Shown piece after piece: positions 29,313 through 48,520 of a stretch of 48,520 bases of DNA. This DNA is from Ranitomeya imitator. Taxonomy: Eukaryota. The notes beneath the pieces were generated by a model, which saw only the letters and a list, made by a program, of their open reading frames with translations, did no database searches and was not told the origin of the DNA. Each line of letters begins with the position of its first letter. Position 1 is the stretch's first letter. Both the position numbers and the translations under genes were made by a program. The stretch is from NCBI RefSeq assembly GCF_032444005.1, contig NC_091287.1, forward strand, positions 563,409,481 through 563,458,000. The letters are read 5' to 3'.

Positions 29313-32300
29313 TTAATCAGGCAGAGGAGTGGCAAATTCCTGCGAGATCCAGGCCTGGTTCATTTTCAGGAAAGTAAGCCGGTCAACGTTATCGGAGGAT
29401 AGTCGCATGCGACGGTCTGTTAGTACACCACCTGCGGCACTAAAGACACGTTCCGATAAGACACTAGCCGCAGGGCAAGCCAGCACCTCCAATGCATACT
29501 GGCTTAGCTCTGGCCATGTATCCAGCTTAGAGACCCAAAACTTGAACGGGGAAGAGCCGTCTGGGAGTACAGTAAGAGGGCAAGCCATGTAGTCTGTCAC
29601 CATCTGACGGAACCGTTGCCTCCTGCTGACTGGAGCCGCCGGTGATGGTGTAGACATTTGGGGCGGGCACACAAAAGTGTGCCAGAGTTGTGCCATACTG
29701 GGCTTGCCTTGGGCAGAGGCACTGCTTCTGCTCCCTCTTTGGGCAGAGCCTCCCCCACTGCCTCGACGCACTGAGCTGCTTTGTAAAGCACTAGCAGCAC
29801 TCCTCTCAGTTGGACAGGAGAAGATGATGGAATTCACCAGTGTGTCGTGGTACTCCCGCAATTTACGCTCCCGGGTCAACGCAGGGATGAGGTTTTGGAC
29901 GTTGTCCCGGTAGCGAGGATCGAGGAGGGTGAACACCCAATAATCAGGCATGTTGAGAATGTGGTCGATGCGGCGGTCGTTTCTCAGGCACTGCAGCATG
30001 AAATCCACCATGTGCTGCAGAGTGCCAACCGGCCCAGAAACGCTGTCCCCTGCTTGAGACATGATCTCTGCCCGCTCGTCATCACCCCACCCTCGCTGTA
30101 CACACTGACCACTGGACAATTGTGTCGCTCCCTCCTCTGGACGGAGCACTTCCTCCTCCATTGACTCCTCCTCATCCTCCTCACAAATTGGCCCCTGCGT
30201 ACCCCTTTGTGAGGAACCACGTGGCGCTGACTCTCCAGAAGCTGATGGAAAAGGTGACTCCTCATCCTCCACCTCTTCCACCACATCATCCCTTAACCCT
30301 TGCAAAGTTTGCTGAAGCAGGCAGATAAGGGGGACAGTCATGCTGACTAGTGCATCATCTGCACTTGCCATCCGCGTGGAATAATCAAAAGGACGCAAAA
30401 CCTGGCAGACGTCCTTCATAGTGGCCCACTCTGTGGTTGTGAAGTCTGATCGGCGCTGACTGCGACTTCTTTGCGCCTGATGCAGCTGGTACTCCATAAC
30501 TGCTTGCTGCTGCTCACACAACCGCTCCAACATATGTAACGTGGAATTCCACCGGGTAGGTAGGTCACATATGATGCGGTGTTCCGGAAGGCGGAATCGG
30601 CGCTGCAGAGCAGCAATGCGGGATCTGGCCAAGCTGGAACGCCGCAAGTGAGCACACTCTAGGCGGACCTTGTGCAGCAGGGCATCAAGATCCGGATAGT
30701 CCCTCAGAAAACTCTGCACAACCAAATTGAGCACATGTGCCAGACATGGGATGTGAGTGAGGTTGCCAAGGGCCAAAGCTGCCACCAGATTTCGGCCATT
30801 GTCACACACTACCATGCCTGGCTGGAGATTCGCTGGCAGTAACCACACATCGCTCTCCTGCTTTATGGCATTCCAGAGCTCCTGCGCTGTGTGGCTTCGA
30901 TGCCCCAATGAAACTAGTTTCAAGACGGCCTGCTGACGTTTGGCCACGGCTGTGCTCATGTCGGTCATAGGTAAACGTTCACGGGTCCATGTGGGGGTGG
31001 ACTGTGACGGATCCTGCAGAGAGGAATCAGAGGAACTGGTGTAAGAGGAGGAGTCGATGCGTACAGACTGGATTCCTGCAATCCTTGGAGTGGGCAGGAC
31101 ACGTCCTGCGCCACTCGCACGATCTGTACCTGGCTCAACAACATTAACCCAATGGGCAGTGAGGGAAACATATCGCCCCTGTCCATGCTGACTGGTCCAC
31201 GCATCGGTGGTGAGGTGGACCTTGCTACTGACGGCGTTCAGTAGCGCATGTTTTATGTTTGCCTCAACATGCCTGTGCAGGGCAGGGACAGCCTGCCTGC
31301 TGAAGTAAAAGCGGCTGGGCACCTTGTACTGTGGGACTGCCAATGCCATCAAGTCACGGAAGCTGTCAGTCTCCACCAGCCTGAACGAGAGCATTTCCAG
31401 GGACAACAGTTTGGCAATGCCTGCATTCAGAGCCTGTGCTCGGGGGTGGTTGGCCGAGAATGCCCGCCTTTTCTCCCATGCCTGTACTACCGATGGCTGT
31501 AGAGTAGACTGGGAGTGTGAGGATGACTGGGAAGGTGGTGCTGTGGGTGGAATTACACAAGGTCTCTGGGAGGAAGCCAAACCAGCTGTGCGTGAGCTGG
31601 AGGAAGAGGCAACACGAGCTGAAGAGGTGGTAGCTGCCGCTGTTGGTTGGCCTACATCTTCAGTGTGTTTCTGTAACTCCACCGCGTGCCTGGTCCGCAC
31701 ATGTTTCCACATATTTGTGGTATTGAGGTTGCTGACATTTTTCCCTCTTTTTACTTTATGATGACACAGCTTGCATTTGACAAAACAAATGTCATCTGCA
31801 ACTGTGTCAAAAAAGGACCAGGCACTGCAAGTCTTGGGAGCGCCCTTTTTGGCTTTGGAAAGAGACAGGCTCCTAACGGGTGCCAAAGTGGAGGCTACAG
31901 GCTCCGCAGTCTTCCCCCTCCCTCTCCCTCTTTGGCCCGTAAGAGGAAGCTCTTCCTCTGAGCTGCTCCCACCACCTTCCTGTTCCTCACGCCACGATGG
32001 GTCAAGGACCTCATCATCTCCACTACCCTCTGCCACCAACTGCTCCTCCTGGGTAGTCTCAGCAGCACAGTACGCACGAGAAAGCGGCACCTGAGTTTCA
32101 TCATCAGATGCGTACTGCGCTGTGGTCACCGGAGGCACTGGCCCACCTGCCTCTTCAGAGTCAGAGAGAAAAAGGTGTTGGGCATCACTGCACACTGCCT
32201 CTTCTTCCATTTCTCCAATGCTGCTTGGCTGGCCCCCTGTTTCCAAGCCAAGAGATTCAGAGAACAGAAGTAGAGACGGCTCCTGTCCTGGGCTCTCTGA

Positions 32301-32621
32301 CTGCCTGGCCAATTTGGCAGGTGGTGAAGAGACAGATGGCTGCTCTCCAGTGCTCTGTGCCTGAGAGGATGTGGCACTAACTGAAGTCGATGCCGAGGCG
32401 TTAGCTGCCATCCACCCGACAACGGCTTCAATTTGGTCTTCACGCAGCAGCGGTGCACGGCGCTCTCCGACAAAGCTGCGCATGAAGGACTGTTCCCTGC
32501 TGAAACTGAGTGACGACGAGTCACCGGCGCCCGCAGCAGGCACAGAATCACCACGTCCTCTCCCTGCTCCTCTCCCTGCTCCGCGCCCACGCCCACGTGC
32601 CTTACTCCCTGCCCTCTTCAT
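29313..32621 (-). CDS. hAT (Ac/ZBED-like) transposase, 1102 aa, uninterrupted
   Basis: BED finger (AWSFF..CKLC..KHVRTRH), catalytic TTDAW, VCDNG and SERVFS, CxxH (CLAH), TRWNST, and a C-terminal hAT dimerisation domain. Confidence 0.96.
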   Translation of the reverse strand: MKRAGSKARGRGRGAGRGAGRGRGDSVPAAGAGDSSSLSFSREQSFMRSFVGERRAPLLREDQIEAVVGWMAANASASTSVSATSSQAQSTGEQPSVSSPPAKLARQSESPGQEPSLLLFSESLGLETGGQPSSIGEMEEEAVCSDAQHLFLSDSEEAGGPVPPVTTAQYASDDETQVPLSRAYCAAETTQEEQLVAEGSGDDEVLDPSWREEQEGGGSSSEEELPLTGQRGRGRGKTAEPVASTLAPVRSLSLSKAKKGAPKTCSAWSFFDTVADDICFVKCKLCHHKVKRGKNVSNLNTTNMWKHVRTRHAVELQKHTEDVGQPTAAATTSSARVASSSSSRTAGLASSQRPCVIPPTAPPSQSSSHSQSTLQPSVVQAWEKRRAFSANHPRAQALNAGIAKLLSLEMLSFRLVETDSFRDLMALAVPQYKVPSRFYFSRQAVPALHRHVEANIKHALLNAVSSKVHLTTDAWTSQHGQGRYVSLTAHWVNVVEPGTDRASGAGRVLPTPRIAGIQSVRIDSSSYTSSSDSSLQDPSQSTPTWTRERLPMTDMSTAVAKRQQAVLKLVSLGHRSHTAQELWNAIKQESDVWLLPANLQPGMVVCDNGRNLVAALALGNLTHIPCLAHVLNLVVQSFLRDYPDLDALLHKVRLECAHLRRSSLARSRIAALQRRFRLPEHRIICDLPTRWNSTLHMLERLCEQQQAVMEYQLHQAQRSRSQRRSDFTTTEWATMKDVCQVLRPFDYSTRMASADDALVSMTVPLICLLQQTLQGLRDDVVEEVEDEESPFPSASGESAPRGSSQRGTQGPICEEDEEESMEEEVLRPEEGATQLSSGQCVQRGWGDDERAEIMSQAGDSVSGPVGTLQHMVDFMLQCLRNDRRIDHILNMPDYWVFTLLDPRYRDNVQNLIPALTRERKLREYHDTLVNSIIFSCPTERSAASALQSSSVRRGSGGGSAQRGSRSSASAQGKPSMAQLWHTFVCPPQMSTPSPAAPVSRRQRFRQMVTDYMACPLTVLPDGSSPFKFWVSKLDTWPELSQYALEVLACPAASVLSERVFSAAGGVLTDRRMRLSSDNVDRLTFLKMNQAWISQEFATPLPD

Positions 32622-36782: not shown

Positions 36783-37482
<700 letters not shown>

Positions 37483-37662
37483 GCGCTGCCGCCAATCTCT
37501 ACAAAACCAAAGGCTCTTCTTACACCCACACCCTCCGCACAGGAGTCGGTGCCTCTTCTATGTAGATGTGCAGTGTGCACTGTCTGTAGCCTGCCTGACA
37601 CCACACAGGGCTCTTATCTTCTGGGCTCCATTGTCTTCTGTTCCAAGTTTTTGTAAACTCCT

Positions 37663-37980
37663 CCACCTCCCTAAGGTGGCTAGCATATATGTATCGCTTG
37701 CTCACCGAGCCCCACTCCATACAGCCAACCAATTCCAGCCCTGTGCTGATGAGGGCCTAAAGCCCGAAACACGTGTCCACAGGTAGGAATTGGTTGGCTG
37801 TGTAAATTTAGAAAACTATTCCGCAGCATTGCACGCTTGGCGGTTCCAAGCGCTGTGGATTAGACAGGGGTGGAAAGAGATGATTTGCATAGCTCCGCCT
37901 ACTGCAAAGGATTCTGGGTAAACCTGCTATTCTTTGTATTATGCTGCTTGCAAGTACTTTCCGTTTCAGGAAAGCATCCA
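37663..37980 (+). mobile_element. ~310-bp hammerhead-bearing insertion (Penelope-like LTR or retrozyme-type monomer)
   Basis: Absent from the paralogous H2A copy 1 flank (~1085-1125); contains the hammerhead; possible TCCAC direct repeats at 37662-37666 and 37977-37981. Confidence 0.55.
37721..37801 (+). ncRNA. Type I hammerhead ribozyme
   Basis: Stem I CCTGTG/CACAGG, core CTGATGA 37746-37752, stem II GGGC-CTAAA-GCCC, GAAA 37766-37769, palindromic stem III ACACGTGT, GTC cleavage triplet ending at 37777, and a 16-bp perfect distal helix 37721-37736/37786-37801. Confidence 0.93.
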
Positions 37981-38070
37981 CTATGTAAAGGGGGCTGCAA
38001 TTTGCAAATGATGGAGTGTGGGCTGCATAAGACGAGGGAGGGGAGGTAGATTGCACAATGAACAAAAGGT

Positions 38071-38580
38071 GACTGCACATGATGAAGTGGGGGGAGAATG
38101 GGGGGCTGCACATGATGAAGTGGGGGGGAGAATGGGGGACTGCACATGATGAAGTGAGGGGAGAATGGGGGACTGCACATGATGAAGTGGGGGGAGAATG
38201 GGGGGCTGCACATGATGAAGTGGGGGGGAGAATGGGGGACTGCACATGATGAAGTGGGGGGAGAATGGGGGACTGCACATGATGAAGTGGGGGGAGAATG
38301 GGGGGCTGCACATGATGAAGTGGGGGGAGAATGGGGGACTGCACATGATGAAGTGGGGGGAGAATGGGGGGCTGCACATGATGAAGTGGGGGGAGAATGG
38401 GGGACTGCACATGATGAAGTGGGGGGAGAATGGGGGACTGCACATGATGAAGTGGGGGGAGAATGGGGGGCTGCACATGATGAAGTGGGGGGAGAATGGG
38501 GGGCTGCACATGATGAAGTGGGGGGAGAATGGGGGACTGCACATGATGAAGTGGGGGGAGAATGGGGGACTGCACATGAT
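38071..38580. repeat. 33-bp G-rich minisatellite (~15 units)
   Basis: Unit GCACATGATGAAGTGGGGGGAGAATGGGGG(A/G)CT. Confidence 0.95.
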
Positions 38581-38712
38581 TCCCCAAAACACATACTGAT
38601 AGGGATTCTAGATTGTGAGCCCCATCGGGGACAGTGATGATAATGTGTGCAAAACTGTAAAGCGCTGCGGAATATGTTAGCGCTATATAAAGATAAAGAT
38701 TATTATTATGAT
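38581..38712 (+). mobile_element. 3'-terminal fragment of an L2-type LINE or its partner SINE
   Basis: CTAGATTGTGAGCCCC...TGTAAAGCGCTGCGGAATATGTTAGCGCTATATAAA followed by an (ATT)n tail, recognised by eye as an L2-like 3' end. Confidence 0.65.
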
Positions 38713-39232
38713 GATGATGATGAAGTGGGGGGGGAGAGCAGTTGATGATAATGTGGGAGAGAGAAAACCTGACAATGAATTTGGGAGGAAGGAGCATGTA
38801 AATAAAATGGGGGAGAGGGGGGCACATAGTGGGGGCGTTGAGATGCATTGACTGTCAATCAATTGGGGGAATGAGTACAGGGGCTAATTAATGTGTGTAT
38901 GTATTAGGTGGGGCAAATTGCTATGTAGTATTTATAGTTGGCGCAGTGGTGGATTATGATTTATATTTGGAATGGTGGATTGCGTCCTGCAATGTATGGG
39001 TACAGCATATACAGCACTATATGGGGGCATACAGAAATGTTACGGCATACTGTATAGGGTTATATAGCATCTACAGCACTGTATGGAGTGTGGTGGAGGA
39101 GCAATAAAGGCAGTGAGCGGAAATATCACATTCTGTAGTCAGCCAATAATTAAGCTTCAAGTCTACGGCTCCGCCCACAGGAGGCGCCACTGTTAACCAT
39201 TTGGAGTCTGCTATTTCCATAATCAGTGATTT

Positions 39233-47287: not shown

Positions 47288-48520
47288 ATAGTAACATAGT
47301 TAGTAAGGCCGAAAAAAGACATTTGTCCATCCAGTTCAGCCTATATTCCATCATAATAAATCCCCAGATCTACGTCCTTCTACAGAACCTAATTGTATGA
47401 TACAATATTGTTCTGCTCCAGGAAGACATCCAGGCCTCTCTTGAACCCCTCGACTGAGTTCGCCATCACCACCTCCTCAGGCAAGCAATTCCAGATTCTC
47501 ACTGCCCTAACAGTAAAGAATCCTCTTCTATGTTGGTGGAAAAACCTTCTCTCCTCCAGACGCAAAGAATGCCCCCTTGTGCCCGTCACCTTCCTTGGTA
47601 TAAACAGATCCTCAGCGAGATATTTGTATTGTCCCCTCATATACTTATACATGGTTATTAGATCGCCCCTCAGTCGTCTTTTTTCTAGACTAAATAATCC
47701 TAATTTCGCTAATCTATCTGGGTATTGTAGTTCTCCCATCCCCTTTATTAATTTTGTTGCCCTCCTTTGTACTCTCTCTAGTTCCATTATATCCTTCCTG
47801 AGCACCGGTGCCCAAAACTGGACACAGTACTCCATGTGCGGTCTAACTAGGGATTTGTACAGAGGCAGTATAATGCTCTCATCATGTGTATCCAGACCTC
47901 TTTTAATGCACCCCATGATCCTGTTTGCCTTGGCAGCTGCTGCCTGGCACTGGCTGCTCCAGGTAAGTTTATCATTAACTAGGATCCCCAAGTCCTTCTC
48001 CCTGTCAGATTTACCCAGTGGTTTCCCGTTCAGTGTGTAATGGTGATATTGATTCCCTCTTCCCATGTGTATAACCTTACATTTATCATTGTTAAACCTC
48101 ATCTGCCACCTTTCAGCCCAAGTTTCCAACTTATCCAGATCCATCTGTAGCAGAATACTATCTTCTCTTGTATTAACTGCTTTACATAGTTTTGTATCAT
48201 CTGCAAATATCGATATTTTACTGTGTAAACCTTCTACCAGATCATTAATGAATATGTTGAAGAGAACAGGTCCCAATACTGACCCCTGCGGTCCCCACTG
48301 GTCACAGCGACCCAGTTAGAGACTATACCATTTATAACCACCCTCTGCTTTCTATCACTAAGCCAGTTACTAACCCATTTACACACATGTTCCCCCAGAC
48401 CAAGCATTCTCATTTTGTGTACCAACCTCTTGTGCGGCACGGTATCAAACGCTTTGGAAAAATCGAGATATACCACGTCCAATGACTCACCGTGGTCCAG
48501 TCTATAGCTTACCTCTTCAT
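47288..48520 (-). mobile_element. CR1 LINE, same family as 1179-2436, continuing beyond the window; frameshifted
   Basis: Near-identical RT and 3' UTR; 8-mer tail at 47288-47305; 1-bp deletion near 48292 (GGGGACC versus GGGGTACC). Confidence 0.95.

What the first reader, a model, noticed from the sequence alone, without database searches (positions are those of the whole stretch)
37482..37801. Hammerhead ribozyme on the sense strand downstream of the stem-loop-less H2A
All conserved core nucleotides are present (C3-U4-G5-A6-N7-G8-A9, G10.1-C11.1, G12-A13-A14, A15.1-U16.1, GUC site at 37777), with a bulged, extended stem I. The short palindromic stem III is typical of Penelope/retrozyme type I hammerheads that can work as dimers. 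Such ribozymes are known in amphibian repeats. What is unusual is the position: 295 nt after the stop of the only histone gene here lacking a stem-loop, same strand, and absent from the intact paralog. Hypothesis: self-cleavage supplies a non-polyadenylated 3' end or destabilises read-through RNA. Coincidental insertion beside a dying gene is equally possible.
Basis: partly seen in the sequence, partly recalled or inferred. Interest (0 to 1): 0.9.

Follow-up and report, generated by a model that had tools for sequence, protein, structure and literature searches.

The report
Stray retrozyme hammerhead beside histone H2A
The self-cutting hammerhead RNA motif is real, but it sits in one truncated copy of a very abundant frog mobile repeat (a retrozyme) that most likely landed behind this histone gene by chance, so it is ordinary.

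Summary
A complete type I hammerhead lies at 37721-37801 (+), with the predicted cut after C37777. It has every core nucleotide, a 4-bp stem II, a 2-bp stem III with a palindromic ACGU loop, and a long bulged stem I. Rfam's HH9 model scores it 30.1 bits, below the gathering score of 52.

The motif is not free-standing. It lies inside a 321-bp repeat copy (37667-37987). Contigs from public runs show that this repeat is extremely abundant in frog DNA. They also show it joined head-to-tail in units of about 353 and 384 bp, and present in RNA libraries. One RNA-library contig carries a 5' adapter joined exactly at 37778, the predicted cleavage product end.

This is a solo, incomplete unit of a non-LTR retrozyme, a class already published for amphibians. 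This scan has noted the family many times elsewhere in the same genome, once in another histone repeat.

However, no RNA contig covers the 184 bases between its stop codon and the repeat. Published relatives of this hammerhead type cut poorly as single units. The proposed role in histone mRNA 3'-end formation is therefore unsupported, and a bystander insertion is the best reading.

The parts
37096..37482 (+). Histone H2A copy 2 coding sequence (128 aa plus stop). The protein is identical to copy 1 (2542-2928, minus strand).
   Evidence: 5 of 387 nucleotides differ from copy 1, all at third codon positions and all synonymous.
37512..37527 (+). Decayed histone 3' stem-loop. The 5' arm and loop remain, but the 3' arm is lost through a 3-nt deletion plus substitutions.
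   Evidence: (2 mismatches to the stem-loop pattern, no pairing arm) and the alignment with the copy 1 3' flank.
37667..37987 (+). Solo, incomplete copy (321 bp) of a hammerhead-bearing non-LTR retrozyme family whose tandem units are about 353 and 384 bp.
   Evidence: Summed contig depth is about 5e5 inside versus about 11 outside in DNA run X1. Joints 37987->37667 carry a 34-nt linker in X1, and a 414-nt X12 contig equals one 384-bp unit plus a 30-nt overlap. A 327-nt contig in X14 matches 37667-37987 with 1 substitution and 1 gap.
37721..37801 (+). Type I hammerhead ribozyme with extended stem I.
37777..37778 (+). Predicted self-cleavage site, between C17 (37777) and C1.1 (37778).
   Evidence: Core numbering read. 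In one search an X19 RNA-library contig carries the small-RNA 5' adapter sequence, which then runs straight into 37778. The adapter sequence was confirmed.
37769..37776 (+). Stem III palindrome ACACGUGU. It forms a 2-bp stem in a monomer and an 8-bp intermolecular helix in a dimer.
   Evidence: the dimer cofold is -101.7 kcal/mol against 2 x -45.5 for two monomers.
37883..37890 (+). Octamer motif ATTTGCAT inside the repeat, downstream of the hammerhead in this solo copy.
   Evidence: Its significance is inferred only.
37957..37987 (+). 3' terminal region of the repeat: hairpin CTTTCC-GTTTCA-GGAAAG followed by CATCCACTATGTA. Many other copies end here against unrelated flanks.
   Evidence: loose ends behind 37985 and 37987 in 16 X1 contigs agree with each other only 0.46-0.53. 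Sequence.

Best explanation
Positions 37667-37987 are one incomplete unit of an abundant frog non-LTR retrozyme. This is a small non-coding retroelement whose RNA carries a type I hammerhead.

The family's life cycle has been worked out for amphibian and invertebrate relatives, and is inferred here. Tandem units are transcribed into multimers. Hammerheads of neighbouring units pair through the palindromic stem III and cut after C17. The monomers are circularised by a host ligase and are copied back into DNA by a reverse transcriptase supplied by an autonomous element; the literature favours Penelope-like elements.

This copy begins 111 nt before and ends 210 nt after the cut site. It lacks the 34-64-nt segment that closes the unit, and it ends at the family's usual 3' terminus. 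It therefore looks like a 5'-truncated reverse-transcription product.

It landed 184 nt downstream of H2A copy 2, in the same orientation, most likely by chance. As a lone unit without a partner hammerhead it is probably a poor self-cleaver, with no role in histone mRNA 3'-end formation.
For: Shown here:
- The hammerhead anatomy is complete and statistically unlikely by chance.
- The repeat boundaries are sharp at 37667 and 37987. Summed DNA contig depth is about 5e5 inside versus about 11 in the flanks.
- Head-to-tail joints 37987->37667 occur in DNA contigs with 34-nt and about 64-nt linkers, giving units of about 353 and 384 bp. These match the unit sizes noted independently elsewhere in this genome.
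- Contigs from runs labelled as other organisms match this copy with 1 substitution and 1 gap in 321 nt, so the copy is young or close to the master sequence.
- RNA-library contigs cover only the repeat. One joins the small-RNA 5' adapter directly to 37778, the expected 5' end after cleavage.
- The element has no long sense-strand ORF, is 48.6% GC, and is strongly self-paired, z -5.4.

From the literature:
- Amphibian non-LTR retrozymes of 330-350 nt carry type I hammerheads with a short helix III. These cut weakly as monomers (6-22% in 1 h) and efficiently as dimers (PMC7229834).
- All seven amphibians sampled carry such elements. Monomers are dispersed evenly, and the rare exon overlaps fall mostly in 3' UTRs (10.64898/2026.07.22.740005).

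Against a link to H2A:
- No RNA contig lies on 37483-37666.
- The other H2A copy also has a young transposon, a CR1-like LINE, about 100 nt past its stop codon. Transposon insertions next to histone genes are therefore common here.
Against: - No target-site duplication flanks this copy, so the insertion mechanism is not directly visible.
- The runs available were Logan contigs of small libraries, which can show presence but not absence. Read-through H2A transcripts in, for example, oocytes or embryos are not excluded.
- The sense orientation and the 295-nt distance from a histone gene that lacks its normal 3' signal is a coincidence. I can only argue it is affordable; I could not quantify it genome-wide.
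- Depth in RNA libraries could partly be DNA carry-over of a very high-copy repeat.
Confidence: 0.85

Rival explanations
1. The retrozyme copy has been co-opted. Pol II transcripts of H2A copy 2, no longer cut at a stem-loop, read into the hammerhead, which cleaves after 37777. This would either give a non-polyadenylated 3' end or mark the read-through RNA for decay.
For: The orientation matches H2A, and the cut site lies 295 nt after the stop codon. The stem-loop is broken while the coding sequence is intact. The next AATAAA on this strand is only at 38801, so read-through RNA would have to cross the hammerhead. Family RNAs do appear to be cut at this site in vivo. Hammerheads embedded in mRNAs are known elsewhere; PMC7229834 cites conserved amniote HHRs with a role in mRNA biogenesis.
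Against: No RNA contig lies on 37483-37666, and no listed RNA run holds that stretch. The copy is near-identical to the family master sequence, so nothing locus-specific has evolved. The 2-bp stem III predicts poor cleavage as a single unit (PMC7229834). By established knowledge, an mRNA ending in a 2',3'-cyclic phosphate without a stem-loop or poly(A) tail is not expected to be stable or well translated. The repeat is so abundant that chance placement is a sufficient explanation.
Confidence: 0.05
2. The 321-bp copy is not a retrozyme monomer. It is the terminal repeat (pLTR) left by a heavily 5'-truncated Penelope-like element insertion.
For: The family has a fixed 3' terminus with many unrelated flanks behind 37985-37987, and this copy is cut short at its 5' side. 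Most PLE insertions are 5'-truncated to a single terminal repeat, and retrozymes are close relatives of pLTRs (10.64898/2026.07.22.740005). Truncated PLE copies were noted elsewhere in this genome (s1-271793).
Against: Contigs that continue upstream of 37667 carry the same sequence that links units head-to-tail in the arrays, not a coding region. The hammerhead is a canonical type I form with a 4-bp stem II and an internal loop 1, whereas PLE hammerheads are described as atypical minimal variants (PMC7229834). No PLE reverse transcriptase ORF is in the window.
Confidence: 0.1
3. The motif is a chance look-alike with no ribozyme activity in any copy.
For: The Rfam score is below the gathering threshold. 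Eight of nine Xenopus retrozyme dimers tested did not cleave in vitro (10.64898/2026.07.22.740005).
Against: All core positions and all three helices are present. The motif is conserved without change in the most abundant RNA contig, X19, over 37703-37791 with 0 differences. An adapter-ligated 5' end falls exactly at the predicted cut.
Confidence: 0.03

Closest known systems
Amphibian non-LTR retrozymes (axolotl Rtz331/Rtz353; newt satellite 2) - Cervera & de la Pena 2020, PMC7229834
   Same: Non-coding units of about 330-385 nt carrying one canonical type I hammerhead with a very short helix III capped by a palindromic tetraloop. They are tandemly repeated, extremely abundant, below 50% GC, highly self-paired and present in RNA libraries.
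   Different: This particular copy is a single, incomplete unit (321 of about 353/384 bp) with no partner hammerhead and no visible target-site duplication. The sequence family is that of a frog, not a salamander. I could not compare the sequences directly.
Xenopus non-LTR retrozyme families and their monomer derivatives - Li, Clavereau & Pollet 2026 preprint, 10.64898/2026.07.22.740005
   Same: Frog genomes hold many families. Monomer copies are dispersed along chromosomes, and the few genic overlaps are mostly in 3' UTRs. These copies are regarded as immobile offspring of active arrays.
   Different: This is a different frog lineage. Here the copy lies behind a replication-dependent histone gene rather than in an annotated polyadenylated 3' UTR.
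Rfam Hammerhead_HH9 (RF02275), the conserved intronic hammerhead of amniotes
   Same: It is the best-matching covariance model, with the same type I topology, the same 6-bp proximal stem I, and a similar internal loop 1 and loop 2.
   Different: The score is 30.1 bits against a gathering score of 52. Stem III is 2 bp plus a tetraloop instead of 3 bp plus a pentaloop. The motif lies in a repeat, not in a conserved intron. It is not a member of this family.
Penelope-like element terminal-repeat hammerheads (cited in PMC7229834 as ref. 23)
   Same: Type I hammerheads with minimal stem III that are thought to act as dimers. They belong to retroelements that co-occur with retrozymes and probably mobilise them.
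   Different: PLE motifs are described as atypical minimal variants. This one has full-size helices and loops, and no PLE coding region is nearby.

Membership tests
Hammerhead ribozyme, type I (class) | Conserved catalytic core: C3 U4 G5 A6 N7 G8 A9, G12 A13 A14, A15.1-U16.1, and H17 that is not G | tested here: met
   Read: CUGAUGA at 37746-52, GAAA at 37766-69, U16.1 C17 at 37776-77. The pattern is unique in the window.
Hammerhead ribozyme, type I (class) | Three helices around the core, with stems II and III closed by loops and stem I open | tested here: met
   Covariance-model alignment, fold, 16-bp inverted repeat.
Hammerhead ribozyme, type I (class) | Site-specific self-cleavage after position 17 | not testable with these tools
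   Indirect evidence only. An RNA-library contig joins the 5' adapter to 37778. It could come from any identical copy of the family.
Rfam RF02275 Hammerhead_HH9 | Score at or above the curated gathering threshold (52 bits) | tested here: not met
   30.1 bits, and no hit in the gathering-threshold run.
Non-LTR retrozyme | Head-to-tail repeats of a unit of about 170-400 bp, each with one type I hammerhead (family level) | tested here: met
   Joints 37987->37667 in DNA contigs of X1 and X12 imply units of about 353 and 384 bp. Tandem arrays of the same sizes were noted elsewhere in this genome (unchecked notes).
Non-LTR retrozyme | This copy itself is a tandem array (two or more units) | tested here: not met
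   There is one hammerhead in the window, no direct repeat in 37483-38100, and only 321 bp of the unit is present. It is a monomer derivative, not an array.
Non-LTR retrozyme | No LTRs, no coding capacity, GC below 50% | tested here: met
   No sense-strand ORF of 90 aa or more lies in 37667-37987. No terminal direct repeats. GC is 48.6%.
Non-LTR retrozyme | Abundant linear and circular RNA of unit length | tested here: inconclusive
   RNA-library contigs cover exactly the repeat and not its flanks. They are contigs, DNA carry-over is possible, and no back-joint was seen in the two RNA runs.
Non-LTR retrozyme | Target-site duplication at the insertion (present in some copies only, per PMC7229834) | tested here: not met
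   The best shared word between the flanks is TGTAAA, and it is not adjacent to the 5' boundary.
Penelope-like element | Reverse transcriptase / GIY-YIG ORF next to the hammerhead-bearing terminal repeat | tested here: not met
   The only reverse transcriptase ORFs in the window belong to the LINE copies at 1230-2327 and 47389-48276. A fully truncated PLE copy would also lack the ORF, so this does not exclude a PLE origin.
Replication-dependent histone 3' end (H2A copy 2) | 16-nt stem-loop downstream of the stop codon | tested here: not met
   six intact stem-loops lie behind the other histone genes, and only a remnant lies at 37512-27. The alignment shows the loss of the 3' arm.

The most novel reading that the evidence does not exclude
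The sense-strand hammerhead of this stray retrozyme copy acts on read-through transcripts of the stem-loop-less H2A copy 2, possibly in trans-dimer with the abundant family RNA. It would either create a cyclic-phosphate 3' end or silence the gene. That would make it a natural case of a transposon ribozyme replacing or overriding a histone 3'-processing signal.
Probability: 0.04. Interest if true: 0.6.

Novelty: already known. Interest (0 to 1): 0.12.

Why it matters
As it stands it matters little. It is one more copy of a repeat class already described in amphibians and already met many times in this genome by this scan.

Two small points have some value:
- The adapter-to-37778 junction is public-data evidence that RNAs of this frog family carry a 5' end at the predicted hammerhead cut.
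- The locus is a clean natural construct, with an intact histone gene, a dead stem-loop and a sense hammerhead 295 nt downstream. A laboratory could use it to ask whether a retrozyme monomer can process a Pol II read-through transcript.

Only if such processing were shown would the finding become interesting.

Tried and rejected
- Rfam at gathering threshold found only three histone stem-loops and no ribozyme. The hammerhead appears only in the E-value run.
- A chance motif was rejected on the core pattern count, the covariance-model E-value and the exact conservation in RNA contigs.
- I looked for a target-site duplication around 37667/37987 and found none.
- I tested whether the repeat shares its 3' region with the CR1-like LINE of the window, as a SINE shares its partner's tail. 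Local alignment scored no better than shuffles (15-19 versus a shuffle maximum of 25). Only the terminal ACTATGT matches the LINE's (ACTATGTT)n tail, so this is kept as an untested lead.
- I tried to fetch paralogous or orthologous H2A loci through the exact H2A protein. Ten places were found in three NCBI assemblies, but no DNA was served.
- The search of earlier findings by sequence was blank.
- The paper on the newt satellite 2 snRNA-type promoter (PMC308520) is not held. That point rests on its citation in PMC2220036.
- The sigma-70 promoter and terminator scan is irrelevant to a vertebrate locus and was ignored.
- The second run search, on 37483-37700 only, listed no RNA run that holds the stretch. 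This means none was listed, not that none exists.

Full report
**1. The observation**

The sequence reads, from 37721: ACAGCCAACCAAUUCC-AGC-CCUGUG-CUGAUGA-GGGC-CUAAA-GCCC-GAAA-C-ACGU-G-UC / CACAGG-UA-GGAAUUGGUUGGCUGU. All invariant core positions of a hammerhead are present:
- C3-A9 lie at 37746-52.
- G12-A14 lie at 37766-68.
- A15.1 is 37769, U16.1 is 37776 and C17 is 37777.

Stem II has 4 bp with a 5-nt loop. Stem III has 2 bp around the palindromic loop ACGU. Stem I has a 6-bp proximal helix, a small internal loop and a perfect 16-bp distal helix.

Rfam at gathering thresholds reports only three histone stem-loops. With E-value reporting, Hammerhead_HH9 aligns over its full length at 37728-37800 (+) with 30.1 bits, E 1.3e-5 for 501 bases, against a gathering score of 52. 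The strict pattern CTGATGAG-N6-30-CGAAAC occurs once in 48.5 kb on both strands, against 0.01 expected. The 96-nt stretch folds far better than shuffles, z -6.3.

**2. The histone context**

A stem-loop pattern search finds intact stem-loops behind H2A copy 1, both H2B genes, H4, H3 and H1. At 37512-27 it finds only a remnant, GGCTCTTCTTACACCC.

Alignment with the copy 1 3' flank shows that the 3' arm was lost through a 3-nt deletion plus substitutions. Homology between the two flanks runs to about 37590. Beyond that point copy 1 is interrupted by the 3' end of a LINE.

The two coding sequences differ at 5 of 387 positions, all synonymous, so the protein is intact. The first AATAAA on the + strand downstream is at 38801.

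**3. What the hammerhead belongs to**

I laid contigs of two DNA runs and two RNA-library runs on 37483-38040. They show a sharply bounded repeat at 37667-37987.

- **Depth.** Summed word depth in DNA run X1 is about 5e5 inside the repeat and about 5-17 in the flanks. The tool warns that this is not a copy number, but it does show a very high-copy repeat.
- **Tandem joints.** DNA contigs join 37987 back to 37667. One in X1 has a 34-nt linker, giving a unit of about 355 bp. A 414-nt contig in X12 covers 37827-37987 and 37667-37856 with 64 further letters between them. Taken as one unit plus a 30-nt overlap, that is 384 bp. These sizes agree with the 352/353-bp and 384-bp hammerhead tandem arrays that this scan noted independently on other pieces of the same genome (s1-294657, s1-294648, s1-292464, s1-312541).
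- **5' side.** Contigs that continue upstream of 37667 agree with each other (0.87) and with the linker.
- **3' side.** Contigs that continue beyond 37985-37987 agree with each other only 0.46-0.53. Many copies therefore end there against unrelated flanks.
- **Age.** A 327-nt contig from X14, and the X12 contig from a differently labelled organism, match this copy with one substitution (37819) and one 1-nt gap (37812). The copy is within about 0.6% of the common sequence.

The element has no sense-strand ORF, is 48.6% GC and is strongly self-paired, z -5.4. No target-site duplication is visible.

**4. RNA evidence**

A run search on 37483-38050 returned many runs holding 0.30-0.58 of the sampled words. 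A search restricted to 37483-37700 listed no RNA run that holds that stretch. Consistently, RNA-library runs X14 and X19 have depth only on 37667-37987 and zero on 37483-37666.

In X19 the most abundant contig over the ribozyme (37703-37791) is identical to this copy.

One X19 contig has the loose letters GAGTTCTACAGTCCGACGA lying before 37776. Together with T37776 and C37777, these spell the end of the small-RNA 5' adapter GTTCAGAGTTCTACAGTCCGACGATC (sequence confirmed). The ligated RNA therefore begins at 37778, exactly the 5' product end of hammerhead cleavage.

This is evidence for the family, not for this locus. It is a single contig. A 5'-hydroxyl end would also need phosphorylation before ligation. 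I count it as supportive, not decisive.

**5. Mechanism**

The family behaves as published for amphibian non-LTR retrozymes. Units of 330-350 nt carry canonical type I hammerheads whose very short helix III makes them weak as single motifs (6-22% cleavage in one hour) but efficient as dimers. They give monomeric linear and circular RNAs that are thought to be templates for reverse transcriptases of autonomous elements, with Penelope-like elements as the favoured candidates (PMC7229834). A 2026 preprint adds four points (10.64898/2026.07.22.740005):
- All seven amphibians sampled carry such elements.
- Monomer copies are dispersed evenly along chromosomes.
- Rare exon overlaps lie mostly in 3' UTRs.
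- The elements are related to PLE terminal repeats.

For this sequence, a cofold of two copies gains about 10.7 kcal/mol over two monomers, through an 8-bp intermolecular ACACGUGU helix. This fits dimer action.

The copy here contains an uninterrupted hammerhead in its middle, ends at the family's usual 3' terminus and lacks the unit's first 34-64 nt. I therefore infer a 5'-truncated reverse-transcription product of a multimeric or circular template. Those steps are inferred, not shown.

**6. The functional hypothesis**

Nothing found here supports a role in H2A 3'-end formation:
- No RNA contig bridges the gene and the repeat.
- The copy has evolved nothing locus-specific.
- A lone unit is predicted to cleave poorly.
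- By established knowledge of mRNA metabolism, a transcript ending in a cyclic phosphate without a stem-loop or poly(A) tail would not be a good mRNA.

Chance is a sufficient explanation. The repeat is extremely abundant. Hammerhead notes occur in 282 findings of this genome's scan. Another array sits in a different histone repeat. The other H2A gene of this window also has a young transposon about 100 nt past its stop codon.

The libraries available were small and stored as contigs, so absence of read-through RNA is not proven. I leave about 5% for the hypothesis.

**7. Comparison and novelty**

This is a type I hammerhead by structure. It is not a member of Rfam HH9, because its score is below the threshold. 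It belongs to a retrozyme family by the family-level tests, but it is itself only a monomer fragment. A truncated PLE terminal repeat is a minor rival. Against that reading, the upstream continuation in other copies is the array linker, and the ribozyme is canonical rather than minimal.

The kind is already known, and the scan has found this family before on other DNA of the same genome. Interest is low.

Noticed in passing
window 37957-37987 compared with 2380-2445 (+) and 47300-47389 (-): The repeat ends with a 6-bp hairpin followed by CATCCACTATGTA. Two young CR1-like LINE copies in the window end with a hairpin followed by (ACTATGTT)n ACTATG. Four DNA contigs leave the repeat right after ...ACTATG (37985). 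This may be tail mimicry of a LINE partner rather than, or besides, a Penelope-like element. No further similarity was found between the two 3' regions.
   Followed up: partly
window 37883-37890 and 37701-37720: The repeat holds a perfect octamer, ATTTGCAT, and about 180 nt upstream of it a CTCACCGAG... stretch. In a 353/384-bp tandem unit the octamer would lie roughly 240-270 nt upstream of the cut site of the next unit. Newt satellite 2 is reported to use an snRNA-type promoter (cited in PMC2220036). In this solo copy the octamer lies downstream of the hammerhead.
   Followed up: no
window 1230-2445 (+) and 47300-48276 (-): These are two nearly identical 5'-truncated LINE copies, matching Pfam RVT_1 and carrying a CR1-type C-terminal motif. 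One is inserted antisense about 100 nt after the stop codon of H2A copy 1, just past its stem-loop and purine-rich element.
   Followed up: partly
window 37566-37643: DNA run X1 holds a 295-nt contig matching this unique-looking stretch of the H2A copy 2 flank at only about 91%. No X1 contig among those listed bridges either repeat junction. There may be a paralogous or allelic site without the insert.
   Followed up: no
window 38060-38600: A minisatellite of 33-34-bp units (GACTGCACATGATGAAGTGGGGGGAGAATGGGG) starts about 70 bp after the repeat's 3' end.
   Followed up: no
window 29313-32621 (-): An uninterrupted 1102-aa ORF carries a BED zinc finger and a hAT dimerisation domain. It is an apparently intact hAT-type transposase or a domesticated ZBED-like gene.
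   Followed up: partly
window 37667-37987, runs X3-X20: Runs labelled with at least five different organism codes, some of only 4-30 million letters, hold about 0.41-0.47 of the sampled exact 31-mers. That is most of the repeat's words. The family's common sequence is therefore nearly identical across several labelled species, and abundant enough to be assembled from tiny data sets.
   Followed up: no
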